Part shown: in pieces, positions 1 through 22,400 of the stretch
Layout of the letters: every line of letters begins with the position of its first letter
Position numbering within the stretch: position 1 is the first letter of the stretch
From: Trichoplax adhaerens
Taxonomy: Eukaryota; Animalia; Placozoa
NCBI RefSeq assembly: GCF_000150275.1
Contig: NW_002060944.1
Span: 4,406,123-4,470,122 of the forward strand
DNA length: 64,000 nucleotides
Reading direction: 5' to 3'
The notes under the pieces: model-generated
What the model was told of the DNA's origin: nothing
The model's input: only the letters and a program-made list of their open reading frames with translations
Databases searched by the model: none
Program-made: the position numbers and the translations under genes

Positions 1-29
1 TTACAACGTTTTACGGATACTATGCTTAC

Positions 30-3000
30 TTTTTTCCTGTCCATTGAGGCTCACTACCTAGTTGATAGTCTCCTTGAAGGAGCAGATAAGCGGAAAATAG
101 CATGATGGAAGGGATAGCAATGTTCTAGGGAATCAAGATACATTATTTTGAATATGTGTAAGATATAAAACGGAAAGTTAAAATAATTTGCTTCATTTAA
201 TTATGTTTCATTATACGCGTAGGCGTAAAATGTTTGGATTTAAATTATTAGGAAAAGCTCGAGATATATCACAGTTATGTCATTTCTATTCGTCATTGAA
301 AGAAAAAATCTTCAGCTCAAAATTGTATGATACTGATAATTATAATTAATAGAAGCGTACATCATTAAAGTATCGCAATAATTGGTTAAATATTTTTGAT
401 GTTATTCGTACTCGATAATGGCTAGGTCGTAGAGCTGACTGTCGTACATTAAACTAATTTCACGTTTATTCATCGATATTTACAATAAACGGTACGTGAA
501 TCTAGACGAGTAGCTAAGCTAGTGATCGAAGATGATTCGATTATTGTAGCTAAAGTGAGGGTATATCATTACACAAATAAGAAGAGATAGAAATTTAATA
601 AGTTACGATAATCTCGAAATGATTAATCTAATAAGAGTTAAATTAGTCTAGCATAAATCTGAAGCAAAGTAGAATACTTTCGGACATCACAAGTAATTTC
701 ATTTAGAGGAAGAAAATATAAAATTTATTTAATACTGTCCAATGAGAAATTTACTTACCCGACCAGGACATTGATGGGTCTTTTCACACTGATCCTTAGA
801 GAAAGGCCCAGCTTCCCAGTACAAATAATTTTTAAGATCCTGTTTAAAAGTAAATTGACAAAATCTTCAAATTTCATGATTGATATGGAAGAATACTGTA
901 CCTATAATCCTTAACTACAGCTAAAAAGGTAGTCTATATAATTAAGTGAGATATAAATCTTACCGGATTATTAAAAAATCGCAGTGCTTGAAAGGTAAGC
1001 GGATCATCGAATACTCTAGTATCTCGGTGTGCCCAAAAGAGATTAGCTACCATTAATTTGCCTTTTGGAATCTTGTAAGTTCCGGTATTAGATTTAATCA
1101 TTAAATCTTCACTAAAAGATAGGCAAAAGAATTAGACTAAAAGTAGAGAATGTGCGGTACAGTAACTTGCTAAATAACGATATTTTCATCATAAGTATAA
1201 TAATTATAACTATGTATTTGGTGTGGATCAAGACATGTCCACTAATATTTTCCTGTATGTTATAGTTTGGACTGTATGTGCCTCTATACTACTGAAGCTG
1301 ATTAAATTTTTTGACTACTTTAGGCAATCGAATATTAAAAAGCAATTTAAAACTTGCTAAAAAATGAAATAGTCAATTAGGTATCCCCTTCAAAAGGGAA
1401 ATACTTACACTGCTCGTCCAAAAATTAAATTCACGGGTGAAGACATTCTAAGATTCTGTAATTTGATAGAATATCATACTGTTAGTTTAAGAAGAGAATA
1501 GTTTAATTTTGTAACCATCATTATCTTGCTACTATTTGCTGTATCCAGTTTACTACAATAGTATATGAACTATATGGGTTAAGGATGCCAATTCTGGAAT
1601 AGTATTTAGTTATGATTTATTTTTGTTTGCCACAAACTCAACAATGGATAATCTAAAACTAAATAGTTAAATTTTTCAATATTAATTCATGACGTATTTT
1701 TCTTTCCCGTTTTACTCAATTCTAACTCCAATTCTCATTTCAAACAATTAAAAGATCATGTAGAGGGATAATTGTACTTTCATCTTAACTTAATATCATA
1801 GATAAATATATTATTGTTTGATGTGAACGGAGAGCTGAATATGGTATTTTAATGAAATTGTATCCGTCTATGCGTACTTTGTCTTAGCAAAATATTTTCG
1901 TTGATAATTAAGAGGAGAAGATCAAGTAATCATTTTAATTTTTCTTTTACTCACTTCCAAAACAAATGAATGGAGCTTTCTCATTTGACACAAAGCTTGA
2001 CCAGTTAGGCCTCCATATTTATCTATAGCACTTTTAATATCTTCGATTAATTCGCTTTTGATATTTTCGTCTAATATTGATATCCTTGCAGCACATGTCC
2101 GAAAGGCAGCACTGCATCCTCCATAGTAATTGAAGCTAATTCATTACCAAGATGCAAATTGAAAGTTATAGAATTAGTAGAGGTATAAAAAATACATCAA
2201 AGAGCCCTAATTTAGCTTTCCTAAGACAGAAATAAATTATGTAACGACGTCTACATCAAGAATTTATTTATCGTGAGGAATTGGATGGATTATGCCTGCT
2301 GTAATAGGATCGTGAATTACTGACCGCAGTATTGTACTTCTATTATGCAGAAACTCATTTCCAGAAAAAATATGTACTATGATTATTTTAAATCTAACTA
2401 TATTGATTCTACTTTCCTATGATGACTTACAGAATGGAAAAGAGAATATTGTTTAATGCTTCCTCTTCAGAAACTGATCGTTTGTCAGCTAGTTTGATCA
2501 TGCTCTGATAGTGGGGAGATTCTTTAATTCCATTGGTGAGAATTGCATATCCAACGATAGCCTTGGAGAAAAATTTAGTTTTGACCCCTAAAGCTGATCT
2601 AGAGAGGTAATAAAAAGTAGAATAAATCGTTAATCAAGAAGATTCTGTGATAGCTACTGTAATTTATTTGATCTACACCGAGTTTAGAATAATTTCGAGA
2701 CAATTGGATATACTACATAACGTATCTATTGAATTGTTACTGTACCACCATAATCGCATTAGATTTAATCTAATGAATAAGATCTAGTGACAAGAAAAAA
2801 TTCTAAATAGAATGACTCTTAAGTGATTAGGATAGACTTAATTAAATAGAAATTTACTATAATCTGTAGTAAAATATTCCGAGTATCAAAGTCTATTCTA
2901 GAACGCTTGGAAAAACTATCGTAAAATATTAGTATCATATGTTCGATCTCTCACTATTATCATATCTAATTTAACCTCAAGTATAAGACGTATAGGAATC

Positions 3001-5975
3001 CTAAAAATTACTTAATTATGATTACATTCAAGTGATTGGGATAGACATAGTAAAGATAAAATGAATAACTAAACACGACTATAATTATACAAGTATACAC
3101 AACAATTCTAAGGCAAATTGAACGACTATGCTTAACTGAAGAGATTTAAATTTATGTCCTTATTAGGCTTAATTTCATGATTGATACAAGACTGAAAGAT
3201 CGTTAAAATCATCTTAATTTGTAATTCTTTCCCTTCAACCCTTTCACGTCCGATTTCGCTACTATGCGTAATCGAAGAGATTCAATTTTTGTCCTTATTA
3301 GGCTTAATTTCATGGATAGTACAAGGCTGAAAGATTATTAAAATCATCTGAATTTGAAATTCTATCCCTCCAACTCTTTCATATCCCATTTTTCTCTATT
3401 GTATAATCATTAATTTCGATCGATTTACGTTATAGTTACGAGTTATATCATGAACGTTTATTTTTTGTACTGCTAAAGAATTAAGCACAACTCAATTTTC
3501 TCAATAAGCTTATTTTAATACGGTTAAGCATTTTTACTTTATTAAAAGTACCTTTTCTTCTTCAGAATGCCCATAAGCCAATTATGAGAAGCTTCGGAAC
3601 TTATCTCTCCTCCAAGGATTGCCCGATGTACAATATCGCTGCATAACCTTAAAATATCCATTTCCCATTCTTTGGCAATACCCGCACCTAGACAAGATTA
3701 AAAATACGATAAATATTACAAGACCAATTTCGAAAGAGGAAGAGAATATTCCTTATGATTCTAGTAGTATTTATACTTCAAATAGGATTTAACGAAATGT
3801 GATGTCCTCAAGTCAAGGTACTATTTAAAGTCACAAGTCTGCAAGTATCCGCGTACTTGTCCGCAAGTAAGAGTACGCTGAAAATCAGTCTCTGCAACAG
3901 AAACTTACCCGTATAACTCTTTTCCCATAAGCTGAAATGTTTTTCAACTGCTTCATTGGTCACTTTAATTAAGTAATCAACCGATGTAGCACGAAAAACA
4001 TCCATTAGAAACTTTCGATAGCGTTCATGTACTTCTCCATTACAAAATATAGATGGTCTTATTTGACCAGTTAGATTTTTGTTGAATTTTAATCGACCAA
4101 AGCCATCATCTTTAGTCACCTGTTATGAAAAGAAATTAGTAAAATCGACGAAATGAAATCTTAATAGAGTCAATGTTATTGCTATCATCATCTTGCTAAA
4201 ATAGATGGAAATAATAATCTTCCAAGAGTACCCTGCATATATAGATACCTAGGTTATCAAATCATTCTTATCTAAATCGCCAATGACAAGTTGTAGTATT
4301 GATATAGTATTTCATTTTACCTTACTATAATCGAAAACTGCAGTTGCACTTTGGCTATCGCACAAGGCGAAAGCTTCTACTCCCAAATTAATTCTAAAGA
4401 TGGTATGGCCAGTCTTCTCTTGAATGGTTTTAAAATATAGATTTCCTTCCTATGGACAATTATCAAGACATTTTTGATGAAATTCACTCCATTATTACGT
4501 TGAAAAGTTATTTCACAAAAACTCTCTCTTCATAGCGGCCCTTCGCTCGTTATGAAGAGATCATAAGAGGTAAATAAGGACGAATTGTAAAATGAATTGT
4601 TCAAAACTTATATAAAGACCCATGCTTTTATTATTATTTTCGATCGTAATTATTTCAATTGAAAGCATAACAGGGGTTAGATCAATCAGGGTTTGAATAG
4701 AAATAAGTGCATCAAACTCTTGTATAAGTATTTTTTTAGCTTTTATCAGTTAAAATGATTTAAACACAAAGATAATCTTGCCTAACTGAAATACCTATCT
4801 AGTAGCGTTTTAAGTCACTTCAGATAATACTGTCGTGATACATTTTTTTGTTGTAGTTATAACCTGAAATTGCGTTAATTATTAACGATTACTTTGACTA
4901 CTTTTTCCTTTACAATTTTGAGAATAAATCTTCACTTATCTCTGTCAATTTAGCGCTAATAGATGGCAGATTGTATATTAAGTGTTTATTCAAATTAAAA
5001 ATAATCATCTATAGCAGACTGTGCCATAAAATCGATGGAGGAATTCAGTGTCAAGTATCATACATAGTATTTATCTCATTTCTATCTTAATTAAAAGTGT
5101 CATCGATCCAAGCCATGATAAACACATCTATAAGGCATCTTAGTTATAGGATTAACCAAAGAATGTTTAGCTAAAGCAAACAAATCAATAAATAAGAGTG
5201 ACATCATCAAGCAAACTTACTTTGATGTCTATTCTATTCTAATAGATCCAGTAGGAGCTCGAGTAAAACTAAATTCTTATTTTATTTCACACGTGTATTA
5301 CTATCATAAAAGTAGCGAATATTGACTCATTACACAAATTTTTAATTTCTACCCTAGGCTTCTGCGCTAAAATAGTGAACATAATCTGGAAACATTTCAG
5401 CGTAGTTTATGATGAAGTGACGTACGAAGCGCTTCCTTGGATTTTAAGGCATCTTTAACTTTGCATTCTAGTAGAAAAATTGATCTGCTTAAAATGTGCT
5501 ACTATAACTGATTTTAACTTAATTTGCAACCGGTTGCCATGTAACTAATGATAATGTATAGCTCCCGCAGTTCAAATGCCTTTTGATGGTTACGATACTT
5601 CTCCAAGCAACAGTTGGTTGGACGAAAAGAATGATAGTTTTGATATTTTAGCGGATAATATCGCTAATTCTTACGTGATAATAATAAGAACTAGATCCCG
5701 TAAATTCGGATTCAATAAATAACGTGGATATAATTTTAATTTAAAATTCCTTTTCTATTCGACATACCGATATCATGATAGATAAAATTGGACAATACTA
5801 TAATATTAACAAACTCCACCCTAAAACACTTTATAACATGGCGAATTGATAGTTATGGTAGTAATGATCGCTTATTTGCTACCTTTAATAGCTTCATAAC
5901 ACTGGGTATAGTCCAACCCAATGAATTAGCCACTTTCTTAGGGTTGTCATCGCTATTAACAGGTTCTACCTTCAT
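30..5975 (-). CDS. CYP74-clan cytochrome P450 (allene oxide synthase/HPL/EAS-like), paralog A; 3' partial, last exon lies left of the window
   Basis: Exons with GT-AG boundaries and compatible phases: 5883-5975, 4321-4449, 3909-4119, 3552-3687, 2431-2598, 1955-2135, 1409-1455, 964-1111, 759-839, 30-124. Motifs: YFKTIQEKTGHTIFRIN, VFDYSKVTKDDGFG, I-helix LFNYYGG, ExxR (E-NLR), HRDTRVFDDP, and heme loop WEAGPFSKDQCEKTHQCPGR with the CYP74-type insertion. Confidence 0.92.
3138..3391. repeat. Diverged tandem duplication (~136 bp period, 2 copies) in intron 4 of CYP paralog A
   Basis: gaagagatt...tgtccttattaggcttaatttcatg...ctgaaagat...ttaaaatcatct begins at 3138 and again at 3274. Confidence 0.85.
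5533..5545. promoter_or_regulatory. RFX X-box-like site in intron 1 of CYP paralog A
   Basis: GTTGCCATGTAAC: a perfect GTTGCCATG half-site with a second half one base short. Confidence 0.35.
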
Positions 5976-6240
5976 GGTTCTACGCGATGAAATGAATAGT
6001 TGGCGATGCTGATGTTTGATTCACTTGAACTTCAATTTAGTCCTTGAAAGATAAATTCAAGGTGTTATCGAGTTAATATACGGCCTTGGTTACCTTTGAT
6101 GAAAGCCAGGATACAAGTATCGCTTCAGTATTCGACTGATGACTATTTTTAACTCAATTACAATATATACATATACATGCGTTGATACGGTATTAGAAGC
6201 AGTAAGAAAGTGTGAGAAAAGCAAAAGGTGAATAGGTCAT

Positions 6241-6250
6241 ATTGGCCAAT
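6241..6250. promoter_or_regulatory. Palindromic double CCAAT (NF-Y-like) box upstream of CYP paralog A
   Basis: ATTGGCCAAT, about 35 bp from the X-box at 6286. Confidence 0.35.
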
Positions 6251-6285
6251 CGACAGAATAACATCGTAACTATCACTTGATCTTA

Positions 6286-6299
6286 GTTGCTATGGTAAC
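6286..6299. promoter_or_regulatory. RFX X-box upstream of CYP paralog A
   Basis: GTTGCTATGGTAAC matches the GTNRCYATRGYAAC consensus; about 310 bp upstream of the ATG at 5975. Confidence 0.6.
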
Positions 6300-9200
6300 C
6301 TAGTCGACGACAATGAGCTATTTTTTTTAATCATAGGCTGATTCGACCAAACTAAACAACCGGTAAATTCTTTCGTCATGAATTCATTATTATTCATGTC
6401 CATTCTATCATACGATTCTGAAGAAATTCGAATAATTTGTTGCCTATAATTATTATTAATCTACTACTCAATCTGGTATTATTTAGCCGTATCATAATAA
6501 CATATTGTCGATAAGGATCCTACATAGGCCCATGATATGCGTATAGGCTATATAGTGCTATAAATAATTCAGATCATGGATAAAGGGTGCACCAAATATA
6601 AACATCGTGATTTAAAAATTATTATAATTTAAATACAAAGGTAATTGCGATATACTATTGTAATGTAACTTAGTATTGTGATGTAGACTGTTAGCCATGT
6701 TTAGTATAATGTACGGTAGATATTTATCCTAAGAGATATTTGGTAGCCAAAACTATAGACTGTAGTGGTATAGACTCTATGCTAGAGTATAGATGACTAT
6801 ATACAGTAAGGTGTTGAGTTACTAATAAGGTTATAGGTAAAAATAGAACTGTAAATCATATATTAGGATATGGTTAATTCATTGTACTTTGGCTGGTGTG
6901 AATAATGTCTACGTAAGTACTGTAGTCGTATCCATATCGGATTAATGATGGTCTGCAGTAGAATAGTGTTACTAAGAAAAATTTTACTATGTGTAAAATA
7001 AGGTAAAAGGTTGTCATGCAGATTGTAGCTGCGAGTACTACGAAAAGTATAAAAGCATGCAACTTTAGATTATTCTGTTAGTTCGTTCTAGAAATCTTTA
7101 GTAGTAGTATTCGGTTAGAGTAGAGCTGTGTGTAGTTAATCTTTGTCAAAGATTCAATAAAGCCCTTATTTTTCTAAAATTTGGAATTTCGTGATCGGTA
7201 TACAGTATATCACATCTATACTACCGGAATATGATTTAAAATTGCTACTGCATTACGTATCTCGTATTTATAATTAAAGATATTTTACAATGTTTTGAAA
7301 TTATGATGATTTCTATTAGAATAGATAGGATCGCGCAGAACATTGTAGGTGTTACGATTAGCATAGTTTTATAGTTATTATAACAGTAAAAGACTATTAC
7401 TCGATCATTAGAGTATAGAATAGGATGTTTAACGTTTAGGTATGAAAGTATATGACAAATACTAAGCATCGATATACTCATATATGCAGTACAGAATTAG
7501 ATATCAGAAATACGTTGTAATTTTAAATTTCATCTATTTCTTAGTATTAGTTTTATGTAACCATACATATACAGAGAAGTATTCCACTTTTTTATATTGC
7601 TATAAAGTTATAGATGAAAAAATTATAGCATCTGTTAAATTAGAATTAGACAAGTAGAGTAGATAAAGTTCCAGGATAAAATTGTAGTTCATTGTTAATT
7701 AAAATGTCAAGTTTTGAACGTAAAATTATAGTAAAATTCGAGATTGAATAAGTTAGTAATATGATACTAGAGTAAAACTATAGCCAAATATTGACGTAAC
7801 TGTTGTAACAAGTTTTATTAATGTTGAATTATAGCTTTCGATTGGTACCCGATATAGGAAAGCTGATTCTAAAACTACCAGATGTTTATGAGTATATTTA
7901 ATGATTGTCGTTAATATGAAGTATTTATTAATAACCCATCTATAAAGAATTCATATCGTTAGATATACGGTAATATGTTTTGAAAAAATATATAGTATCA
8001 AAGGCGACATTAAATAATTCGTAGCGGTTTAGATCCATAGCAACAGCCTTACTAGTATAAGTTCTAACTTTAATCAATATAAACGAGAAAAAAACAGTTG
8101 TTATGGTTTATCTGGACATTTACATGTTAATCAAATGATTATGGCTTCTGTAGTCTATGCATTTGTTTATCAATAGTAGATCAGTAAAGAATTCGCTGCA
8201 GGATACAGTTATGTATGATCGAAAGTTATAGTAATACGTCATAACTGCGTCAATTAATATTTTAATTATAATGATTATGATAGCACGTGATAATAGAAAC
8301 GAAGTTATTTATGCCTTTGGTCTGAAGATACATAAGTCAATTTAGTAAATCGCGTATTCAAGAATGAATAGCTTAGGTAGTAAGTTTATATGTTATGCAT
8401 ATAGGCTATACTTTCGATCATTGGCATGTATTGTCATCATAGATGGAACAAATAGTACCCTAGCCTAATTGTTTATCTTTGGTTAGAGTAAAATAGATAG
8501 GCATCAATTCTTTATGGACATTGTAATTGACTACATAATTCTATCTTAGATAGTACTTCTTATACAGTATTTGACCTGATATAAAGCTTAAGAAGTAATA
8601 CAGCACTAAATTTATTGCTGTATATGTTCTTTATTATTTGTGGTGTTGCAGAAATATTATATGAAGCTGAATAGATTTATCTAGTTTATTTACCCTAATA
8701 TTTTATTAATACTTCGTTCTTTACATAAGAGATTGAAATTTTTTAACATATTTAGCTTTGCTGTCCTTTCATAAAAATATCAAAGGTAACACATTTCTTA
8801 CCAACCTGTTAATAATTGTAATACGCATACAATTAATTTGTATTATCATATACTATACACGCATATCAATATAATGAGAATATACTGCAGACCTTAATGC
8901 GTCAAGTGTACTAGTGTATCACAACGTAACTGATTTACTTATCTTTCAAATGATTACTTAGTGATACATATGACAGTAAGAAATCTGATAATAAGATTTA
9001 TTTATCTTATATTTTGTAATAACGGACTACTTTACATGTCCGTAACCTAACCAATCAGGTTATAAATGCATGTAATAATTGAAATTATAGTTATCTATAC
9101 GCATGATAAGAAATTTATAAAAATTTGAGCTCTATGAAATCTTAATATAATATTACCTATCATTATGCCAACTAATGATAAACCAAGATAAATATTGCTA

Positions 9201-10577
9201 TAATTTTAAATAGCTAAATTCCATGTAAAACCGGAAATATGCCTTAGTTTTCACTCAGAATAAGGTTTAATCCTGTCTAGGTGCCTATACTGTATATGAT
9301 GTAACACACATCTTTTATTTTGAATTTACTCTTGGTCACCGTTTAATTTCAAAGCGGTATTAGACCGGACTGATATTGAATTTTTATCATTTTCATAAAT
9401 TTTTTTGTGCAAAAATTTATAATTTCATGCAACATAGTGCAATCAATTTATACTGTGAGATGACTTAGATCCAATTATAATTGACATAGCTACTAATCAA
9501 ATATAAGTCAATTATGAAGATCAGTAACCAGTTTTACTTCATAATAATATTAAATCGTCTCTAATTAAAAGCTAAAATAGTATTTATCAATTTTACATTA
9601 TCTGTTTGCAGATGGTGTACAAATATCACAAGTGCAAAAATGGTTTCTAACCTTAGATAATGCTATTCAACACATTAAAATATGAAATATCATCTATCTC
9701 GTTATGATGCATATAAAATGAAGTTAAACCACCAATACTCTTTTGTTATTAAATTATCTGCTCTTACTAGATATTATTTCTGAGCAAGAAATTCATTCTA
9801 GACCGTAGAATCATGTTTAAAGAGTTACATATCATAAAAATAATTTAATATCCGCCTTAAACGCAAATCAAATATATCCTATCTATCGGAATCTCGATTT
9901 TTTACTTAAGGAGTAGTTATTCATGAATAAAAATCTATTTGAACTTGTAAAATTATTAATAGATAGTCTGAAGAAAAGCTTATTTATAAAGTATTGTGAT
10001 TAATACTTAGTGAGCTACTGCATCAAAAGCAGTATCTGGGCCTAATAAATTAAAAGAATCCAAGACATGTGTTGGTAGATTAACGGAAAACTAGAAATTG
10101 AAAAGCAAGATAGTGTATTAGAATCTGGAGTAGCCTAGGCTAATCAATCTTTAATTTGCTATTAGAGTAGACAATACTTTTAAATTTTTAGTTAGTGAGT
10201 GGAATAGATTCGAATTTTTCAATTTATTGTTATAAAATATAATCAAGATTAGCTCTACGTATAGATTAATTTTTTTCTCACCGATTATGAGGGTGAATAA
10301 TATTTAAACTTATAGTTATCGAATAAAGTTGATTAGATCGTATTATCTATTTACATCTTAGTCATCTATAGCTGCTTAGTAAATACTGGAATTATCATCT
10401 TAAACAATACTATAACGAAGTCTATGAGACTGAATTACTTTTTATGCATGTCATTACATTAGACTAGACAATGTGGTATATTGCTTGTCACGTGCCTTTA
10501 TAAGTGAACATACCATAGTGATGCATAACGAAATATTTACAAGGCCTTCTATGCAAGAAAAATCTAATTTAATCAGC

Positions 10578-13500
10578 TTATACCTTAGCTGGTTGAAAGG
10601 AGAACTGTTTCAGACTGATAGGTTCGTCAGGACAGCCACTTCGACTAGATCTAGAAACATCCAAAGCAGGGATTAATAATAGCGGTAATCGTTTAAATAA
10701 TAAAGGATAAAACCGATAATATTCATATTAGCTTGATACTGGTAATGCTTTATTTTTAGATCTTTTAAGAAATAGTCCAGTATTCATGAACTGATATTAA
10801 TGATAATTAGATTAACCATGAATTACTTGAGATACTCATCGATAATAGAAAATATTAATATTGTACTGCACATTTAGATGCTGATGGAAGTCATCTTAGT
10901 ATTTAAGCAAATAAATACTATAGTAGAAAGATGGGGAATAAATATCATGGATAATCCGTAGATTAATCCAGAATTAATATAATGTTAAAAAAGGTGAATT
11001 AATTGTGAACTATTTCCCTTTTTTATCTAAAATATATATAATAAGAGAGTTTTAGGGTGATATTTAGAAGATATTAAGAGTTTTTTTAGGTATTATTGAT
11101 ATACTTTTTGCCTGTCCAAATTGGCTCTTTATTCAATGTATACTGGCAGTGTAGTAGTAGATATAGACAGAAAACTTCGATCAAAGGGATGGCAATTCCC
11201 TAACGAATATTAGATACAGAATTTAGTAAAAGATGAAAGTAATATTTTCATCTTTAATACTAGTACGTTTTTATATAGCACAGATAGTACAACTCATAGC
11301 TATATTTTGACTTACCTTGCCAGGACACTGATGACTATCTTCAGTAGCGTTAACAGTATAAGGTCCTGCTTCCCACACAATGTTTTGTTTCAATGCCTAG
11401 TTGCGTATTATATTTATCAATTTTAAATGGTTATGAAAGCATTATAACTGTAAGCTAAAGATATTTCGAAATGTAATGAATTAGGGTAAATAAATCGAAA
11501 TCTGATAAAATTACCGGTTCTTCTATAAATCGGAACGGTCTAAATTCTTCAGGATTTTTAAATATGGTCGGATCACGATGTGCTGAATAAATACTACCAG
11601 CTAATAATTGTCCTTTAACCACTTTAAATTTGCCTGATGATGAATAGATAACCAAATCTCGCCTAGTTACACAATAAACGTTGAATAGATATTTCAATTT
11701 TAATGCCAAAATTAATTTCTAATTTATCATGCTATCAAGTTATCTAGATGTAAAAAAATGTCTATCCTGTTTTTTACAATATATTATTATGGCTAAAACT
11801 AAATTGGAATTTGCACCTATCTAGTTTCTTGATCGGTATTATTCAAATTGTAAGTCTAGTCACTATTTCGCGATAGCTATCACTATCGCTTTCTCAAGTA
11901 CTTTCTTCTTATACAAGTACTTACTCAAAGTTTATTAAAACGAAAAAACTTACTTTGTACGGCCAAATATCATAGAAATAGGAGGTGAAGTACGTAATAC
12001 CTATAAATAAGAAATAGATTTAATGTCCATTACTCCATAAGATATTTAATATTTAGAATAAGATCGCCTGATAATATCAAGAATTAGTTTTTGATATTCA
12101 TAATTGCATATGCAGTACGTGTATGTGTAATTTTTGCTATTACCTAGTAGTCAGTACCTTATAATCTTTATAAATCAGACTAAATTTGTGATTATTAAAG
12201 TATTGTATCTTAATACTGGGACACTTAAGAAATTTTTAGCTGCTAATTGAATGATATCTTGGTGAAGATTTATGATAATTCCAAATCTGGAACTATTAAA
12301 TAGGTGCATTAATTCTTCTAGGGTATCAAGATTTTAGAAAATTGCTACTATAAACTAGATGATGCGCTAAATATGAGTTTCGATTACTCTATTACATAGG
12401 TCAAGATACAAGGCATAATTTTGTCTGGTATTGCCAGAAATGGACTGAAGCCCGAAGAAATTGTGGCTACGCTCTACGAGAGAAATCATTAATTAAATTA
12501 CTAAAAGTCCATCTTAATTTCGCTAGGCAATAAAATATCAAGGGAGTTGCTTCTTTAAGCTAGGTGACTAGGTGTTTTTCTATGTAAATAAAAATATGTA
12601 CATTGTATACCAAAACATCGTTTTACCAAAATTCTTTATAGAAATGGATTAATTATCGCAGAAAATTTGTACCTATAGTGCAAGTTTAACTCTATTCTCC
12701 ATGAAATTAATTATAATATTACGATATGAATCAAGATAGGGCTACGCCTATCAAAGAAATATTTAATTAATCTTGTATCTCCTTGAAGATGATATCTTTA
12801 TCGAAATTATATCGGGAATCTCGAGGGCATTTTATAGAATTAATTATTAATTTATAATGTAAATCAGATTATTTATAGTAATGCGTTGCTGAGACAAGTC
12901 ATAAAGTCAAAACTTTCGTTAACATATTTCACTGTTATACTTGAAAGATTTGAAATTTTTTTAGAATATATGACATGAAAAGTTTAATTGATATCTGAAA
13001 ATTGTGGTAAAGTTTACATATGATTATTGATCTAGGGATATCGTAATATGAAGTATTCTACTGCTTTACCTCCAGAACAAATGATTCTAAAGTTCGCATT
13101 TGATACAGAGAATTCGCCGATAAACCATTATGATTTTCCAGTCGGAGCTTAATTTCGGCAATTAACCGTTCTCTTTCAGCTTCTTTTAGTAATGCTATGC
13201 GCGCTGCACATGTTCTTATAACGCAATTGCAACCTCCATAGGCATTGAAACTGCAAAGTAAATAATATTATTTAGTAAGATATTACTGGTTAGATCCTGT
13301 TCATATTCTAACACTAGATGTAACTATATCAAATAACAGCCATTCGATATAGACAATTAAATAAAATTTTGTGAGCCATAACTTTACTTACACCATGGCA
13401 AATAAAAGATTGTGTTTGGCGTCTTCAACATCTAATGAATGTTCTCCAGCAATTTGGACTATTTTCTTTAAAGTGGGTGCTCTCTCAATATGTTTCATCA

Positions 13501-16500
13501 TCTCTTGATATCCAATATAAGCATTAACGTAACTTTTTGTTTTCATCAATCCAAGTCGTCTAATAATGTTAAAAGTCACGGATATAATAATAGCGCACCG
13601 ATTTATGTAATATTAAAAAACTATGTATCAAATTTGTGATTTCTATCGGGTATTTTTTTCTTATTTCTGATTCTTTTATTATTGATAAATTGTCACTCTA
13701 TGCGTATAGTATGAAAGTGATATAGAATTATTTAAATGCTAAACTTACTTACGTAAATAGTATTGCAGTAATACTGTATAATTATACCAGTTACTCATCA
13801 TCATTAATACTAACATGTGATCATATATCGTTAGTGGTACTCGAAATTATCATTTTAATTATTTATTATGATTTCAACATTAACGTTTTTAAACCTGTCG
13901 TAGTCTTATTGCTAAGCTTATAAAGGTTTTGTGCAATTCGTGCAAATTTGGTAGGATAGGCTATCTACATTATAGACCGGTTTAATCTAAATGATGTCTT
14001 ATTGTAGCCTACATAATTTACCTCGATCTTTCAAATATACCGGAGATCCAATTTTGTAGAGCAGCCACATTCCCCTTCGATCCAAGGAATAAAGTAGTAA
14101 TTATATCACTACAAACTTCTTGTATTTCACTTTCAAAATCTCCTGCTACACTATTCTCTATGTTAAGATCAAACAAAGTTAAGCTGCGTTAGATTAACGG
14201 AAGATTTAAGCTAGATTTTACGACATTAGTCCTTTCTACAGATTAGTTTCCTAGAAAATATTTATGAGAGCTATGCTGTATATTACAAAATTAAATATTA
14301 GTTAGCCGTAACTAATAAATATTAGATAAGACTAAGAATAAAGTATAGTATTATTTCTCTAGTTGAAAGCGAGGTCTAAAAATGAATTGCTGGTTATAGC
14401 TATATTAGATGGATTTATATTGTTTCTTAACGACACAAATCAAAGTTAACGGATTACCTCGATGCGAATATGAGTATTTATTGCTCCAAGCTTCGAAGTG
14501 TCGACGTATAATTTTATCTGCAATCTTGATCATGTAGTTAGCTGGAATATGGCGAAGAATTTGCATTATAAATCGTTTTCGACGAATATGTGATTGATCG
14601 TTGGAGAATATTGATGGTCTAATATTAGCCATTAAATCGAAATTGAGTCGCACTTTACCAAAACCATCTTCTTTTGAAATCTAAAACAATTTAGAGGTAG
14701 AAATTAATTCTCAGAGCTACGTATATTTGCAGATCGCTGTAATAGATCTTACTAAAATTGAATGGAGTATACCTCATTTCTGAAAAATGAACATAATGTA
14801 GCATGTAATGCTACCCTACTAGGCTACTGCTATATAAAGCATTGCTTAGAGCTTTAAAATTGACCTTACTAAAACTAAATGGACAATACCTCCTTTCCTG
14901 AAAAAGTGAACGTAAGATAGCATAGAATGCTACCATACTAGCCTACTACTGTATGAAGTATTGCTTACGCTGTCAAATGAAGCAAAGTCATGATTATTAG
15001 ATCAATTACCATGCTAATGACATTCCCTGTACGATATTTACTATCGGACTATTACATTTATTAAGAATTAAAATGATACTGGCAATAGCGTAAATAAAGA
15101 TTAAAATGCTACTCTACTTTAGCTAGTGTTCCTGAATCCAATTAGATCTGCGCCTACAGTATATCCTTAGAAATGTTATGTTTATGTGCTGCATTCTACA
15201 GTTGAATTTAATAAAGCTGATTAGTAGTAAAATATAAAGATATTAAACGGTGTTCTATAATCGACCTTAACTATAACCGATAAACTACACATCTTCTATG
15301 AGGAATTAGGGCGATATATAACGTTTGTTTATGTTTATGATTACATTATTATTCTAGTTTATTTTATTTTGCATTACTAGAATCATATATGTTATAATCG
15401 TTACCTCTATTGTATTTAGATTCTCTACTCTACTACTATACTATATGAAATCGATAATATTAAAGAAAATTAACGTATCTTTCTTAAATTGCAACATATT
15501 TCTATATAATAGAGACATTTCTTATTTTAACTTACGCTATCGTGATCAAATAAGGTTTGTATGGCTATGTTATCTAATAGAGCCACAACTTTAGCGCCGG
15601 CGTAGACTCGGAAAACAGTGGAATTATATTTTTCTTCATATTGTTTAAAAAATGTATTTCCATTCTAAAGAAAAAAATTCAACGGTGTTAATAATTTGAA
15701 GTTGGCGAATCTTGAATATTATTAACTAACGAGCGAACGTAAAGATTAGACTACTAATATTGTGCTTAAAATTGGATATTAGGATTTGGTTTTATAGAGT
15801 AAGATAAATATCTATAATTCTTGAGAATAAGATTCTTCTAATTCACATTTATCGTGCAATTTCAACATGATGTGTGTAGAAAGAGCATATGACATGGGTT
15901 GCATAGCCGATGATTTAGCTTATATCTAGGTTGTAAGTGTAAGTATATGCCTACTCTCATTATACAATATTAAAATGTTTCCATTCTCGAAGTTAAAATC
16001 CTACGTCTCATAAATTATTGACTTTAAAATTCAGCGAGAGCTAGACAATCAAGGCCTCTATATTACATTACAGTATAATATTTAAAAACAAATAAGAATT
16101 AATGACAAGCTTTATTTGAATTGGGTTTGGGCTTATTCATTACGTAAAAAATTCATAAAAGGTAACATAATTTGGACCGTTTGAGATGGCCTAGGCTCTA
16201 GTGTGAAATTCTTTCACAGGATATCGCTAACTAGAAAGTTTTTGGTACTTCATATAAGAATTAAACTCGTGCTTGTAGTTTTGACTTTCTATCAGTAAGT
16301 CTATCCATTAAATTTTTAAGGTTTTAATTTTAAAATTCCTCTAGTATACTTTCTTGACCATAAAATAAATATAATATAAATATTTTATTTACTGCAAAGC
16401 TCAAGTTATTCAGAGCCTAAAGAATAAAGCCTGAGTCTATGATTTTTTAACCTTTCTATTCTCGAATTCGCTGTTAAATTTATAGCCCTAATTCTAAAAT

Positions 16501-18094
16501 TACCCTAGAGCATAAATATAATTCTACAAGAAGGATCTAAGCTATTATGTGATATGTTATTAAAAGAATTAAATATTCTAATCTGTATCTAAGGTTAATT
16601 TTATAATCGTGTTTTGGTGTTGTTTAGACACAGCGCTTGTTCCATTTCCTGTGTTACATTGGGAATCAGAATGGCTAAAGCTTGATCATAAACATTGCGT
16701 AGCCTTTACTGAAGCATTTAACCAATAATGTCTATTAATAGATGGATGTAATAACATCAATTACCGGTACTGTCGTTATAAAAACGGTGGGCAGTTTAAA
16801 TTATGTTTTGAATTCTATTACAAATAGTAATAAAATCGAAATTAGTCCTTAGTAGAGTAATTAAAATTTAATTTTTCTTACGGCGACTTCAAAAATTGAT
16901 CTAATCTTTCAATTAACAAGATTTAGTCATTAATTAAATATATCACAGGAACCATAATGCAGCCTTCATATAGATATAGTCTTTATTAAAACTAGACGAA
17001 ATATTTAATTAAAAACATCCGACACTTTGCTTTTCAAGTGTTAGTTTTAGCCTCTTTTTTGTTATGACGATAATATTGAGATCCTAGAATACTCACGAAA
17101 TTGAAGCATCATGCCGAATGGCATATTATACATTAATACAATTAATTTCCTAAACTTCCATTATTCAATACTTTCTAGAACAATCTATTCACAATGATTC
17201 TATATTCGAGATATTGAGTCGATTAATCGATTTGAAGGCGATCAAATTTTGATCTAATTTTTTGAATCTAATAGTTGATGCTTTCTAACGACGACATCTA
17301 GATTACTTAATGAAGTCGAAATATCAAGTTGAGCATTATTTAATAAAATTATTCATATACGTAAATGTTCAAGTTACTACCAAATCATTTCAAGTATTTA
17401 TCTCAACATAAGCTGCCTCGGGCGAATTGCCAATAGCTTAATCGTCTAGATTCTAGAACATGCATAATTTTCGTGTCCTCCGGTAATATGATTGTTTAAA
17501 AGCAATCGCATATAAATGGGACGTTATCACTATGTAATCATTTTGCCCTTTTCGAGGTAGAATTGCGATTTTATGCTTTCTTTTAGCTATTTTACCTATG
17601 ACCCATTTATCTTTTGACAATAACTTAAAGCCTTTAATCCGCTTATACCGTAGGACTATGTTAGTATAGTGATGATAGGAATATGGTACAATGTGATAAG
17701 ATTTAATGTAATGACCAATACACTAGTTCTGTTATCCGCCTGAGGGTAAAAGATGACTGTGTCGATTGCCGATATTCATTTTAACTGTATGAGTAAAGAT
17801 TCAACTTTTAGAATTCCATTGGAAAATATTTAGTAATGACTGGAAAAATCTCGAGTATCCTTAATATTAATCAGATTAGGGATTCTGTATCATATATTTA
17901 TTTAAAAATCGAATGAAAGTTATAAGTTATTAATTATTATTGATATTTATATCATAAATTCATTTACGGTTACTGCGCGTAGGAGGACTTACTTTGATCA
18001 TTTTGATAGCATTAAAAGTAACCGAACCAAATTTACCAGGCACTTCTCGTGGCTCATCTTCTGGTGTGATAGATGTTCTATTCTTTCGAAACAT
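10578..18094 (-). CDS. CYP74-clan cytochrome P450, paralog B, complete (11 exons, 460 aa)
   Basis: Exons 17993-18094, 15536-15664, 14458-14680, 14022-14157, 13392-13559, 13070-13250, 11954-12000, 11515-11662, 11316-11396, 11105-11199, 10578-10650 give 1383 nt in frame. Motifs: PREVPGKFG, EKYNSTVFRV, VVALLD, I-helix FNAYGG, EVLRTSPP, HRDPTIFKNPEEFRPFRF, heme loop WEAGPYTVNATEDSHQCPGK. Confidence 0.94.
14748..14971. repeat. Diverged tandem duplication (~118 bp period, 2 copies) in intron 2 of CYP paralog B
   Basis: cttactaaaa..aatgga..atacctc..ctgaaaaa..tgaac..tagcat..aatgctacc..tactag..attgctta at 14748 and 14866. Confidence 0.8.
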
Positions 18095-18575
18095 GGATAG
18101 AGATTCTCTACGATTGTATAAATTTTATTGAGTAATCAAGTGCTCTTAAGTTTTGTTGATTTCAATGGTGAACGGCCGATTTTTATCTTGGAATCATGAA
18201 ATTGATGATGGTAAATCAAAAGTATGTTCGATTTTAACAGCAGTAGAAGGAAATACTTTTAAGTGTCTATCGATTAGATTGACACTCGAAAAAGAGTAAT
18301 AAATCAATAGATGATCAGTGTTATCAAGTAGAATATTTTGGTCGTAGGAAATGGATTACTTCCAAATAATTCCAAGTGTAAGGGAATAGGAGCAAAATAG
18401 TAGTTAAGCCAGGATATTTTCAAGTACAGTAATTGCGGTACTAAAAATAAGTAACCTACACGTTTACAGTTATTAAGGCGACGTGGAGTTACTTGACCTA
18501 TTTCACTCTTGACGTTATGATGTCAATTAATACATTGCGCTGTAATAGATTTCATTCCTCACGCTCGAAGTAATT

Positions 18576-18589
18576 GTTGTTATGGCAAC
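18576..18589. promoter_or_regulatory. RFX X-box upstream of CYP paralog B
   Basis: GTTGTTATGGCAAC with a perfect ATGGCAAC half; about 480 bp upstream of the ATG at 18094. A CRE-like imperfect palindrome TTGACGTTATGATGTCAA lies at 18509-18526. Confidence 0.6.
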
Positions 18590-19404
18590 TCTAGTTTACA
18601 TTCTCAAGGTTTAACAATCAATATTTGTACAATTACAATCACAATATAGTAAATATTTTCAACTTTTGCTCAATAGTATGTAATCGTTCCATATATATAT
18701 CCACACATAATTATATCTAATAATTTACGATAATTTTTTAACTAGCTGTTATACTTGCATACCAATATCTCGGTTAATATAGTACTTATTGAATTATTGA
18801 AATCCTACAAAATTCTATACATCTTTCAGTCTATTCATTCAGGTTTCAATTTAATAGTTGGTGTTGTCAAATTTTTATAATAATATCTATTGACTCTAGT
18901 TAAAGCGATAGACTGATATTTTCGCCACCATTCTTCATCAATAAAAAATAATCCAGATTTATGTTCATTGTTCTCAACGGCATTGATTTAATTGTCTTTA
19001 TTGTAAACAGTAAATACTACATCTATTTTATATTCTAATCGATGTTTGAAATATACAATGCGTAACGTGCTATTAATATAAGGACAATGTTATCCGTAAT
19101 AATATCTTACTCATGTACATCTTGTACGAGAAATAGCATTATTTTTAAATACCTGACAACAAATTTTAATATCGTTGATAACAAGTTTAATATACTAAAA
19201 ATCCGATTGATGGTAATGGTAGTAGCAAATTTACATGATCACTTCACAATGTAGAAGAGAAAATTTTTTAAATACGCCACGTAACTAGCCGATTTTATGA
19301 TCGCGTGATAACATTCATGAATTATGCATAAACTCCTTAAATAGTCGTAAGAATCTAATATTATAAAAAATAGCCTAGACGGGTAGAATAGATGCACGAC
19401 AACG

Positions 19405-22400
19405 CTAACTTTGTCTAGCGTGAGATCGAACTTCAAGTTGCTTTTCTTCCGGAATACTACCGAATACCTATAGAAATTAAAATCATACGGACTTAATTTT
19501 AATATTTGTACAATTCAAATGTCACAAATATATAAAATTGAAGATAAAATATCACCGGTACGATAATTTAAATATATACGTTGCTCTTGTCGCTCAATAA
19601 ATAAATCGTAACTTTAATTCAAACACATTAATGAGTAATAATCGTACCTCGCTTGGAACCATCCTTTCTTCCAAGGTGACTTCTGTAATTTGCGGATATG
19701 AAAAGTTAATATTTAAATATTAGGCATGCGTATATGGTACACAGAACATAGATGTCCTTATCAAGGTCATACCGGGTGCAGGCACTTTTTCTACATCATT
19801 ATCATTATCATCATCGTCATCGTCTATATCAATTTCTTCCGGGTTAGATGCCATAACTGCCTCTTTTGATTCTTCCTGAGTTGTATCGCCCCTATAAAAT
19901 AAAGTAATATTGAAAGAGTGAGTTAGACGATCTTTTTATTAACAAAACATGGTTGTTACAGTACACATAAGCATTGATCATTGTGAATTATTTTAATAAA
20001 ATTTTACCTGATAAATAAAATATCCCGTTTACCAACTTTAGGTTGATCTTGTTTAGCTTCTTCAATGATTGCTTTCGCACGTTCTTCAAGTTTTTTCATA
20101 TCGTCACTACCTGGATCAGCTATTTTTTGTTATACATAGAAAGCAATATTTAATTACCTCAACACTTGTATAATGTGTCAAAAATTTAAATTACATACCT
20201 CCACTAGACTCTGATCCCGGAAGCATTTGGGCTGTCATGTAGTTTATCTAGGACAATGAATAGTATAAATTTACCTGTGCGGTTTCTACTAAAATTTCTA
20301 TTACTACAGATTTTTAAGAGCTTCCAATTTCTTTCTAATCTAGTAATTCAAGCAAAACATACCTTAGTGTTAAATTTAGCCTGTATGCTACGTTTAATGC
20401 GTAGCATTTCACGGAAGGTATCTTCATTGCCATGACGTACTTCAAAGTCATGCCAAGTTTTCCAGAATGATGCCTCTTTCTGCATCATACACAAGATAGA
20501 AATTTCATTTTACCTTAACGCTTTACGCTAATAAAGAACAGTTCAAAAGTACATATACAAAATTACCCTCGGATCACAAAGCTGCGAACAATAGCCATAA
20601 ATTGCTCTAGCCCGATCGATTTCGCCTAACTTCGACTCTAGATCCGCAAAACGCATACACATTTCTCTAGTACTATCATCCGGCAGAGATTCAATTGCAC
20701 GTTCATATATCTGGCGCGTATATGGCAATCCAAATACATCAGCTGCGCGGCTAATGTAGATATTAAACATCTACAAAGAATAAAAAGAAAAACACTTAGA
20801 AATACGTACATCACAACCGTAACGACCTTTCCAAGATGATGGTCTACCGCTAGTACTAACCTCAAATTTTTCATTTGGTAAAACAGCACTTGCAGCTCGT
20901 TCATAAACAGCCATAGCATGGCGGGCTAGCCCATATTCTTCCTCTAACTTTGCGTATAGCAAGTATAACGCTGGAATTGTCGTTAATATCAATTAGGTTA
21001 CGCCAAATTTTATACATACATTAGATAAGTAAATTTTTAGCGAATGTCAAATATAAGATATACTTTTAGCAAATTTCGATGGACAATTATCAAGAGCGTT
21101 CTCAAATAAATCTCTTGATCGTTCTAATTTTTTGCCGCCCTATCATAAAAATTAGATATAAAATTGACATACTTAATACATAATTGGTTTGATATTAGTT
21201 AAACATAGCAAAGTTCATAATTCCTTACATAGCGAGCTATAAACTTTTTTAAGTACGTCAACCAAATGTCATATACGTGAGGCCAGTTAAATAACGCAAT
21301 ACCCCGTTCATAAGCCTGTTCATTATAGTGATTTCATAGTGAATGGTCAGTTAAAGATTTAAAATTTGATTACAGTACAATAGACATACCTTGAAAGCTT
21401 CTTCAAAATAATGATTTTCTTCCAAGAACATTGCAAAGTTTATAATAGTTTGAGGATTGGCTATCCTTAGATCAATGATCCTGTTGTAAACAGCTTTCGT
21501 AGACTATCGTATTGATAGATATATCAGGATATTACGTTTACAGGAAGCATCATACATACAAGATACAACAATATTAGACGCATACATCAAACGTTCCGAG
21601 GCTTTCTTCCAAGTCTGCATAAAACATCCATAACTTTAACGATTTATAAACACGACTTTGTACAGCTTCTTTCTAAAGTGTTTCATATATAAAAGGTATA
21701 TTAGTACATTCAAATCAAGGGTCATAATCAAATAAAGGCAATTTTTAAAGTCAAGCTAGTACCTCATCGAAGTACTCTGCACGCCGTGAAGGTACGGCAG
21801 TTGCCTTACGTAATACATCGAGTGCTTTATCATAATTTCTAAAAGTAATTGACATATTGAAGTTATTTTTATATACATGATCTAAAGTTTAAAAAAATAA
21901 AATCAAAAGTTTGCGTAACTCCTAAAACTTACTTATGCCTTAATTCCATTTCAGCAAATTCGCACCACACGGCAGCTAAGTCATCAACATATTTGAAGGG
22001 AACTTTTGTTGCTTTTTGAAAAATAATACGTGCCTTTTGGTCCAAATCGAGAGTAGTAAGAATTAATTTCGCATAATGATTTAAACTCTACGAATATCAA
22101 TTAACCATACTCAATCAAATTATAATGATAAATATTTCAAGAAATACCTCAGGTAATTGATCATTATCTTCGTAAAACCGAGCAAAAGCTACCCATAAAG
22201 TATGTGGCTTACCAGATGCCTCAGTAGGACTAACCGTTTGCACAGCAGCTGTAAATGTCTTTATTACCTGTCGATTGTAGCATCAAAATGTAAGGAGTAT
22301 AGTTATTAATACGTAAAATTTTGATCTATTTACACAATTACATCTTGAGGGCTTCCTTCGAACAACTGAACTCTCTTGTGCCATTCATGAACATTATGAG

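What the first reader, a model, noticed from the sequence alone, without database searches (positions are those of the whole stretch)
6241..18589. Both CYP74 promoters carry RFX X-boxes: a possible ciliated-cell oxylipin programme
Seen: GTTGCTATGGTAAC (6286-6299) and GTTGTTATGGCAAC (18576-18589) lie about 310 and 480 bp upstream of the two ATGs, while the rest of the promoters are unalignable by eye. A third near-match, GTTGCCATGTAAC, is in intron 1 of A (5533). A CCAAT palindrome flanks the A site and a CRE-like palindrome flanks the B site. I saw no other full X-box in the window. Established: RFX factors drive ciliary gene programmes via X-boxes, often alongside NF-Y/CREB sites. Inference: the motif survived the duplication, so these enzymes may be expressed in ciliated epithelial cells. 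I know of no description linking CYP74 oxylipin chemistry to ciliated cells.
Basis: partly seen in the sequence, partly recalled or inferred. Interest (0 to 1): 0.8.

Follow-up and report, generated by a model that had tools for sequence, protein, structure and literature searches.

The report
RFX X-boxes before two CYP74 genes
Two neighbouring plant-type oxylipin P450 genes of the placozoan Trichoplax each have a strong RFX-type "X-box" a few hundred bases upstream, a motif that elsewhere in this genome sits mostly beside cilium genes, so the enzymes may be switched on with the cilia programme; this is not yet shown by expression or by deep conservation.

Summary
GTTGCTATGGTAAC (6286-6299) and GTTGTTATGGCAAC (18576-18589) lie 311 and 482 bp upstream of the start codons of two minus-strand CYP74-clan P450 genes, A and B, in Trichoplax adhaerens. 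On a rough RFX matrix they score 20.2 and 18.3 bits. The next best site in 104 kb scores 12.4. Both are unique DNA, with no repeat, RNA gene or visible divergent gene.

The genome has at least four RFX DNA-binding-domain loci. It has 31 strict X-boxes against about 10 control matches. Of the 30 other strict sites, at least seven flank axoneme or microtubule genes: CFAP54, CFAP90, SAXO1/2, a dynein heavy chain, a DRC1-like gene, a TEX49-like gene and an apicortin-like gene. A chance pair in two paralogous promoters is unlikely, about 5e-4 genome-wide.

- Paralogues C and D have no X-box.
- A, B and D are equidistant (about 42% identity), so "survived the duplication" is not shown.
- The only reachable orthologue (Trichoplax sp. 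H2) is 99.6% identical in the promoter, so it says nothing.
- No expression data could be tied to these genes.
- Most placozoan cells are ciliated, so "ciliated-cell expression" discriminates little.

Verdict: plausible new RFX targets, moderately interesting and untested. Earlier notes of this scan report X-boxes beside cilium-type genes elsewhere in this genome.

The parts
6286..6299 (.). X-box A, GTTGCTATGGTAAC. It is a near-palindrome 311-324 bp upstream of the gene A start codon.
   Evidence: It scores 20.2 bits. It is one of 31 strict GTTRCYATGGYAAC sites in 105.6 Mb. The surrounding DNA is unique in the genome.
18576..18589 (.). X-box B, GTTGTTATGGCAAC. It has one perfect half-site (GTTGCC) and one weaker half (GTTGTT), and lies 482-495 bp upstream of the gene B start codon.
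   Evidence: It scores 18.3 bits. The surrounding DNA is unique in the genome.
5533..5545 (+). 13-mer GTTGCCATGTAAC in intron 1 of gene A. It has a perfect left half-site, and the right half is one base short. It is a weak candidate only.
   Evidence: GTTGCCAT occurs 4 times in the window against 1.1 expected.
6241..6250 (.). ATTGGCCAAT, a double CCAAT palindrome. It lies 35 bp gene-ward of X-box A, about 270 bp upstream of the start codon.
   Evidence: single copy in the window; 10 of 100 shuffles have one. CCAAT is not enriched near other X-boxes.
18510..18525 (.). TGACGTTATGATGTCA, a CRE half-site (TGACG) within TGAC-N8-GTCA. It lies 50 bp gene-ward of X-box B.
   Evidence: Read directly. 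Its significance was not tested.
6103..6113 (-). TATCCTGGCTT, preceded directly by TACTTG. This 11-mer is shared with promoter B and lies 173 bp gene-ward of X-box A, at -138 from the start codon.
18406..18416 (-). TATCCTGGCTT, preceded by TACTTG and then AAAA. This is the same 11-mer, 160 bp gene-ward of X-box B, at -322 from the start codon.
   Evidence: 40 copies genome-wide against 14 control; a collinear match of 11 or more in 32 of 1000 shuffles.
1..5975 (-). CYP74-clan gene A (XP_002109963.1 / B3RP49, 485 aa). Exon 1 is at 5874-5975, and the last two exons lie before the window start.
   Evidence: Its only PDB relatives at E <= 1e-10 are CYP74A2 and Arabidopsis allene oxide synthase. 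The heme loop reads WEAGP...HQCPGR.
10500..18094 (-). CYP74-clan gene B. Exon 1 starts at 18094, homologous exons were mapped from 15661 down to 11104, and the 3' end is approximate.
   Evidence: The heme loop reads WEAGP...HQCPGK. The H2 annotation calls a 486-aa P450 here.

Best explanation
The two 14-mers are genuine RFX binding sites. They place CYP74-clan genes A and B under an RFX factor, most likely the one that drives motile-cilium genes.

The proposed mechanism is inferred, not shown. An RFX dimer binds each near-palindrome about 150-200 bp upstream of the probable transcription start and raises transcription in cells where the ciliogenic RFX is active. The two oxylipin-forming P450s would then be made together with axonemal proteins in ciliated epithelial or gland cells.

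Shown here: the sites exist, they are exceptionally strong, they sit in the right place and orientation-neutral position, RFX genes exist, and strict X-boxes in this genome flank cilium genes.

Inferred: binding, direction of regulation and cell type.
For: Site strength:
- The sites score 20.2 and 18.3 bits, against 12.4 for the next best in 104 kb.
- Chance expectation is about 2e-4 per 600-bp promoter. Two such sites in promoters of paralogues in one window works out at about 5e-4 genome-wide (my arithmetic).

The motif marks cilium genes in this genome:
- The strict motif has 31 unique sites against about 10 control matches.
- Genes within 2.5 kb of other strict sites, transcribed away from them, include CFAP54, a TEX49-like microtubule inner protein, SAXO1/2, dynein heavy chain DHC_N1 and a p25alpha+DCX protein, NYD-SP28/DRC1-like and CFAP90.
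- Weaker matches are DNAH5-like and SAXO5-like.
- The distances from those X-boxes to the candidate start codons are 237-612 bp. The 311 and 482 bp seen here fall in that range.
- Upstream regions of IFT57, IFT46, BBS5 and three B9 genes hold 9 sites of 11 bits or more in 26 kb, against about 1.3 expected.

Other support:
- There are at least four RFX DNA-binding-domain loci.
- No repeat, RNA family or convincing divergent ORF explains the sites.
- The H2 annotation has no gene between A and B.
- The link between RFX and ciliary genes predates animals (bioRxiv 10.1101/2022.11.11.515474; PMC2873420).
Against: - There is no binding, accessibility or expression evidence.
- Two of the four paralogues (C and D) lack the motif.
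- The transcription starts are unknown. In other species RFX sites cluster much closer to the start.
- The six core ciliogenesis genes tested here have only weak X-box-like sites, at most 14.4 bits. Motif strength therefore does not simply track "ciliary".
- Some strict sites flank non-cilium genes, namely Jagunal and a Delta-type ligand. About a third of strict sites are expected by chance.
- All RFX family members bind similar sites, so the ciliogenic factor is not singled out.
- My matrix is an approximation from memory of published logos.
- The neighbour survey had no formal control set, and 18 of the 30 loci remain unidentified.
Confidence: 0.55

Rival explanations
1. The sites are real RFX-family sites, but they serve a non-ciliary RFX function. 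This could be repression or activation by another of the four or more RFX paralogues, such as the RFX4/6-like or an RFX1-type dual regulator. Expression would then not follow the cilia programme.
For: - There are at least four RFX DNA-binding-domain loci.
- PMC10580291 Table S3 lists a "like_RFX4/RFX6" gene in an unassigned (grey) module.
- Strict sites also flank Jagunal and a Delta-type ligand gene.
- RFX has non-ciliary roles in fungi.
- From general knowledge, vertebrate RFX1, 5, 6 and 7 have non-ciliary targets.
Against: Most identifiable neighbours of strict sites here are axonemal genes.
Confidence: 0.22
2. The sites are chance matches. Two AT-rich near-palindromes happen to fall upstream of two paralogues and have no function.
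For: - The loose palindromic pattern GTTNYYATRRNAAC is not enriched genome-wide: 313 sites against 365 control.
- About 30-40 chance sites of 18.3 bits or more are expected in the genome.
- About a third of strict sites are expected by chance.
- C and D lack the motif.
Against: - The joint placement in two paralogous promoters has an expectation of about 5e-4 genome-wide.
- 0 of 100 shuffles reach the observed count in the window.
- These are the two top-scoring sites in 104 kb by 6 bits or more.
- A second shared collinear element exists.
Confidence: 0.12
3. The X-boxes belong to other, unannotated transcripts. These could be a small cilium gene or a non-coding RNA transcribed divergently on the + strand. 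The CYP74 genes would be bystanders.
For: - X-boxes elsewhere sit in bidirectional promoters, for example Jagunal and a dynein-like gene at L018.
- Short ciliary proteins are easily missed by annotation.
- The intergenic spaces are large: 4.4 kb upstream of A and about 1.6 kb upstream of B.
Against: - No convincing open frame lies on either strand in 6000-10400 or 18100-20350.
- The H2 annotation calls nothing between B and A.
- There is no Rfam hit.
- The same accident would have to happen twice.
Confidence: 0.08

Closest known systems
DAF-19/RFX X-box promoters of nematode and other animal ciliary genes
   Same: - It is a 14-bp imperfect palindrome matching GTHNYYATRRNAAC on both strands.
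- It lies a few hundred bases upstream of the start codon.
- The same motif class flanks axonemal genes in this genome.
   Different: - The target is a soluble oxylipin-forming P450, not a structural or transport component of cilia.
- The distance to the transcription start is unknown.
- No RFX dependence has been shown.
Vertebrate MHC class II S-X-Y promoter module (RFX5 complex on the X box, NF-Y on a CCAAT Y box, CREB on X2)
   Same: Promoter A has an X-box followed gene-ward by a CCAAT palindrome. Promoter B has an X-box followed by a CRE half-site.
   Different: - The two promoters do not share the same companion motif.
- CCAAT is not enriched near X-boxes in this genome.
- From general knowledge, the RFX5/RFXAP/RFXANK/CIITA system is vertebrate-specific.

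This is resemblance only.
Metazoan CYP74-clan enzymes (CYP440 of lancelets, CYP443 of Nematostella; PMC8124189, PMC10813956)
   Same: - Genes A and B are P450s whose only close solved relatives are CYP74A allene oxide synthases.
- They carry the extended heme loop with Cys.
   Different: - The product chemistry of the placozoan enzymes is unknown.
- I found no description of their transcriptional control or cell type.

Membership tests
RFX X-box promoter element | 14-bp imperfect palindrome of two GTTRCY-type half-sites, matching GTHNYYATRRNAAC | tested here: met
   Both sites match on both strands. Site A also matches the strict GTTRCYATGGYAAC pattern, and site B has one mismatch.
RFX X-box promoter element | Proximal position upstream of the regulated gene | tested here: inconclusive
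   The sites are 311 and 482 bp from the start codons. This is within the 237-612 bp range seen for X-boxes beside cilium genes here. The transcription starts are unknown.
RFX X-box promoter element | An RFX factor is encoded by the organism | tested here: met
   PF02257 matches above cut-off at four or more loci.
RFX X-box promoter element | More frequent than chance and associated with ciliary genes in the same genome | tested here: met
   There are 31 strict sites against about 10 control. At least seven of the 30 other strict sites flank axoneme or microtubule genes. No formal control set was scanned.
RFX X-box promoter element | Conservation of the site in orthologous promoters of diverged species | tested here: inconclusive
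   The H2 promoter is 99.6% identical overall. No Hoilungia or H23 locus was reachable.
RFX X-box promoter element | Physical binding by RFX and RFX-dependent expression | not testable with these tools
   This needs EMSA, ChIP or ATAC footprinting, and knock-down.
CYP74-clan cytochrome P450 | P450 fold with CYP74 enzymes as nearest characterised relatives | tested here: met
   PF00067 matches exons of A and B. For gene A, 3DAM, 2RCH and 2RCM (CYP74A) are the only PDB hits at E <= 1e-10.
CYP74-clan cytochrome P450 | Heme-thiolate cysteine in an extended heme-binding loop | tested here: met
   The loops read WEAGPFSKDQCEKTHQCPGR (A) and WEAGPYTVNATEDSHQCPGK (B). The comparison with the plant loop pattern is from memory.
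CYP74-clan cytochrome P450 | Rearrangement of fatty-acid hydroperoxides without O2 or reductase | not testable with these tools
   This needs a recombinant enzyme assay.
MHC class II-type X-Y module | Fixed X-box plus CCAAT (Y) pairing shared by the co-regulated promoters | tested here: not met
   CCAAT accompanies only site A. Near 30 other X-boxes, CCAAT is no commoner than in control windows.

The most novel reading that the evidence does not exclude
Placozoan CYP74-clan oxylipin enzymes are true members of the RFX cilia regulon. Ciliated epithelial cells would then make hydroperoxide-derived oxylipins in step with building motile cilia. That would be an undescribed link between plant-type oxylipin chemistry and ciliated-cell function (signalling, defence or ciliary beat control) in an early-branching animal.
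Probability: 0.3. Interest if true: 0.7.

Novelty: new member of a known kind. Interest (0 to 1): 0.45.

Why it matters
The roles of animal CYP74-clan enzymes are unknown. Knowing which cells make them and under which programme would give the first functional handle on them.

If the link holds, it adds a metabolic, signal-producing arm to the RFX regulon in an animal without nerves or muscles, whose behaviour runs on cilia. It also gives a directly testable prediction in existing placozoan single-cell and ATAC atlases.

If it fails, it is a useful warning that even very strong X-box matches in promoters are not proof of ciliary regulation.

Tried and rejected
Deeper conservation:
- A word search with the full-length gene A model found only itself and its H1 twin.
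- The exon 1 piece of B found nothing.
- The only fragment from another lineage is a 1.4-kb ENA contig with an internal exon, 73% identical to B. It does not reach the promoter.
- P0002 from the representative search proved unrelated.

Expression:
- No paper in the library names these proteins or links Trichoplax with CYP74.
- Table S3 of PMC10580291 lists modules by TriadG ids that I could not map to A or B. It is also truncated in storage.
- The 2018 placozoan atlas paper is not held, and neither is the PNAS 2010 RFX paper.

Alternative origins of the sites, rejected:
- A repeat or transposon origin.
- An RNA gene.
- A hidden divergent gene.
- A CCAAT companion rule.
- A+B sisterhood.

Other dead ends:
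- A Tektin family search found nothing in six-frame mode.
- I could not check for a lipoxygenase gene with an X-box.

Exons were searched by reference, and full-length comparisons used database proteins P0003, P0004 and P0007. The paralogue distances are sums of exon-by-exon BLAST hits. Nothing here looked human.
Full report
**What is there**

The window is C1413:4406123-4470122 of a 105.6-Mb, 1414-contig genome. Its proteins are recorded as Trichoplax adhaerens. The region is about 30% G+C.

Four CYP74-clan P450 genes lie in tandem on the minus strand. No further copy exists elsewhere in the genome.

| Gene | Start codon (window coordinate) | Public model |
|---|---|---|
| D | -12426 | XP_002109961.1 |
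| C | about -4618 | none in hand |
| A | 5975 | XP_002109963.1 = P0007; H2 twin P0003 |
| B | 18094 | none in hand |

- Residues 1-34 of the gene A model map to 5975-5874.
- Exon 1 of B aligns with that of A.
- The only solved relatives of A at E <= 1e-10 are CYP74A2 and Arabidopsis allene oxide synthase.
- Both A and B keep the heme cysteine in an extended loop.

The premise "two CYP74 promoters" is therefore sound, with the qualifier that there are four such genes.

**The motifs**

GTTGCTATGGTAAC is at 6286-6299 and GTTGTTATGGCAAC is at 18576-18589. They start 311 and 482 bp upstream of the two start codons.

- Both match GTHNYYATRRNAAC on both strands, and they are the only sites in the window that do.
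- On an approximate palindromic RFX matrix (built from memory of published logos, so useful for ranking only) they score 20.2 and 18.3 bits. The best other site in 104 kb scores 12.4.
- Under a composition-matched background, sites of 18.3 bits or more are expected 0.02-0.03 times per 64 kb and about 2e-4 times per 600 bp.
- About 0.3-0.6 windows in the genome should hold two such sites by chance. Requiring both to fall within 600 bp upstream of members of one four-gene family brings this to about 5e-4 (my arithmetic).

The DNA around both sites is single-copy. It holds no repeat and no Rfam family. No convincing open frame lies in either intergenic space, and the Trichoplax sp. H2 annotation has no gene between B and A.

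The intron 13-mer at 5533 is one base short of an X-box. The CCAAT palindrome at 6241 is real. The "CRE-like palindrome" at 18510 is only a half-site.

**Does an X-box mean anything in this genome?**

- RFX DNA-binding domains are found at four or more loci.
- The strict pattern GTTRCYATGGYAAC has 31 unique sites against about 10 for the reversed control.
- The loose palindromic pattern is not enriched, at 313 sites against 365. Only the G/C-bearing strong forms stand out.

I fetched 5 kb around the other 30 strict sites. I searched open frames transcribed away from each site, exon by exon. Of 50 pieces searched against Pfam, seven of them also against PDB, 13 were identifiable.

| Locus | Match |
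|---|---|
| L033 | CFAP54 |
| L016 | TEX49-like doublet inner protein |
| L009 | SAXO1/2 |
| L014 | dynein heavy chain N-terminal region |
| L029 | p25alpha+DCX (apicortin-like) |
| L025 | NYD-SP28/DRC1-like |
| L021 | CFAP90 |
| L018 | DNAH5-like (weak) |
| L028 | SAXO5-like (weak) |
| L018 | Jagunal (not cilium-related) |
| L011 | Delta-type ligand (not cilium-related) |
| L015 | TPR (ambiguous) |
| L034 | EF-hand (ambiguous) |

Distances from those X-boxes to candidate start codons are 237-612 bp, so 311 and 482 bp are ordinary.

I also tested the reverse direction. Upstream regions of IFT57, IFT46, BBS5 and three B9-domain genes contain no strong X-box; the best scores 14.4 bits. They do hold nine sites of 11 bits or more in 26 kb, where about 1.3 are expected. 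The 104-kb CYP74 neighbourhood has six where about five are expected.

The RFX-cilia link therefore holds in this placozoan. This agrees with its origin before animals (bioRxiv 10.1101/2022.11.11.515474; PMC2873420). The CYP74 sites belong to the strongest class, the one that marks motile-axoneme genes. No formal control set of loci was scanned, and 18 of the 30 loci remain unidentified.

**What the evidence does not show**

*Retention since the duplication.* Exon-by-exon identities are A-B 41.6%, A-D 43.0%, B-D 41.8%, and 38% for each of the three pairs that include C. This is a star-like pattern with no A+B pairing. C and D have no site above 8.4 bits within 2 kb upstream. Common descent of the motif needs two losses, and independent origin needs two gains. 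The data cannot choose.

The promoters are otherwise unalignable except for one same-strand 11-mer, TATCCTGGCTT.
- It lies 173 bp (A) and 160 bp (B) gene-ward of the X-box and is preceded by TACTTG in both.
- It has 40 copies genome-wide against 14 control.
- It is absent near other X-boxes.
- A collinear match of this length arises in 32 of 1000 shuffles. That is suggestive only.

*Cross-species conservation.* The only orthologous promoter I could reach is from Trichoplax sp. H2. It differs at 3 of 725 positions, which is too close to say anything. Searches for Hoilungia-grade sequence gave only a 1.4-kb contig with an internal exon.

*Expression.* I found no record for these genes. PMC10580291 states that both epithelia are ciliated and defines a cross-cell-type cilia module. 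"Expressed in ciliated cells" is therefore nearly a default. Module membership is the informative test.

**Mechanism and odds**

Most likely (0.55), both sites are bound by the ciliogenic RFX and couple A and B to the motile-cilium programme. TATA-like stretches suggest transcription starts about 170 bp (A) and about 340 bp (B) upstream of the start codons. That would place the X-boxes about 150 bp upstream of the start and the shared 11-mer just downstream of it. This is my reading, and it is inference only.

| Rival | Probability |
|---|---|
| RFX-family sites with a non-ciliary role | 0.22 |
| Chance | 0.12 |
| Sites serving an unannotated divergent transcript | 0.08 |

**Comparison with known systems and novelty**

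The element passes the sequence, position, factor-presence and genomic-association tests for an X-box. Conservation is inconclusive, and binding is untestable here.

It does not fit an MHC class II-type X-Y module. The two promoters have different companion motifs, and CCAAT is not enriched near X-boxes here.

CYP74-clan enzymes in animals are known (PMC8124189, PMC10813956). I found nothing on their regulation or cell type.

The finding is therefore a candidate new member of a known kind of regulon. It is moderately interesting (0.45) and cheaply testable in existing placozoan atlases.

Exons were searched by reference, and full-length work used database proteins. Earlier notes of this scan on other DNA of this genome report X-boxes beside cilium-type genes (s1-762660, s1-741780). 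My neighbour survey agrees with them, and I did it independently.

Noticed in passing
window 6103-6113 and 18406-18416 (minus strand): The 11-mer TATCCTGGCTT, preceded by TACTTG, is shared by promoters A and B. It lies collinear with the X-boxes, 173 and 160 bp gene-ward of them. It has 40 copies genome-wide against 14 control, and a collinear match this long arises in 32 of 1000 shuffles. It may be a second conserved promoter or 5'UTR element.
   Followed up: partly
L029 (G000:C1412:8199849-8204862), X-box at 2501-2514: A perfect palindromic X-box (GTTACCATGGCAAC) lies upstream of a gene encoding p25alpha plus doublecortin domains. This is an apicortin-like architecture, otherwise known mainly from apicomplexans. 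It suggests the gene belongs to the cilia regulon.
   Followed up: partly
L018 (G000:C1410:3491977-3496990): A strict X-box sits in a roughly 1-kb bidirectional promoter. On one side is a single-exon Jagunal homologue, with its start codon 432 bp away. On the other is an exon with weak similarity to the N-terminus of axonemal dynein heavy chain 5, 612 bp away.
   Followed up: partly
L011 (G000:C1403:1211964-1216977): A strict X-box lies about 470 bp upstream of an exon encoding a DSL (Delta/Serrate ligand) domain. This is either a non-ciliary candidate RFX target or a chance site.
   Followed up: no
L038-L043 (upstream of three B9-domain genes, IFT57, BBS5 and IFT46): Core ciliogenesis genes lack strong X-boxes here; the best is GTCGTCATAGTAAC at 14.4 bits, about 1 kb upstream of IFT57. 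Weak X-box-like sites are nevertheless 6-8 times enriched. Strong palindromic X-boxes appear reserved for motile-axoneme genes.
   Followed up: partly
genome-wide listing: The exact 14-mer GTTGCTATAGTAAC (or its complement) recurs at five or more of the first 50 listed sites of the loose pattern. I did not examine whether these share flanks, as a small repeat family would.
   Followed up: no
window about 19750-24600 (minus strand): The gene upstream of B is a HAT-repeat SYF1/XAB2-like splicing factor with an acidic C-terminal tail. It ends about 1.15 kb from X-box B, so B's promoter region is tail-to-head and not shared.
   Followed up: no
L035 (ENA ERZ23499115, 1.4-kb scaffold): A metagenome contig carries an exon 73% identical in protein to the gene B exon at 14456-14680. 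It is presumably from another placozoan lineage, so diverged placozoan DNA exists in public metagenome assemblies, but only as short contigs.
   Followed up: partly
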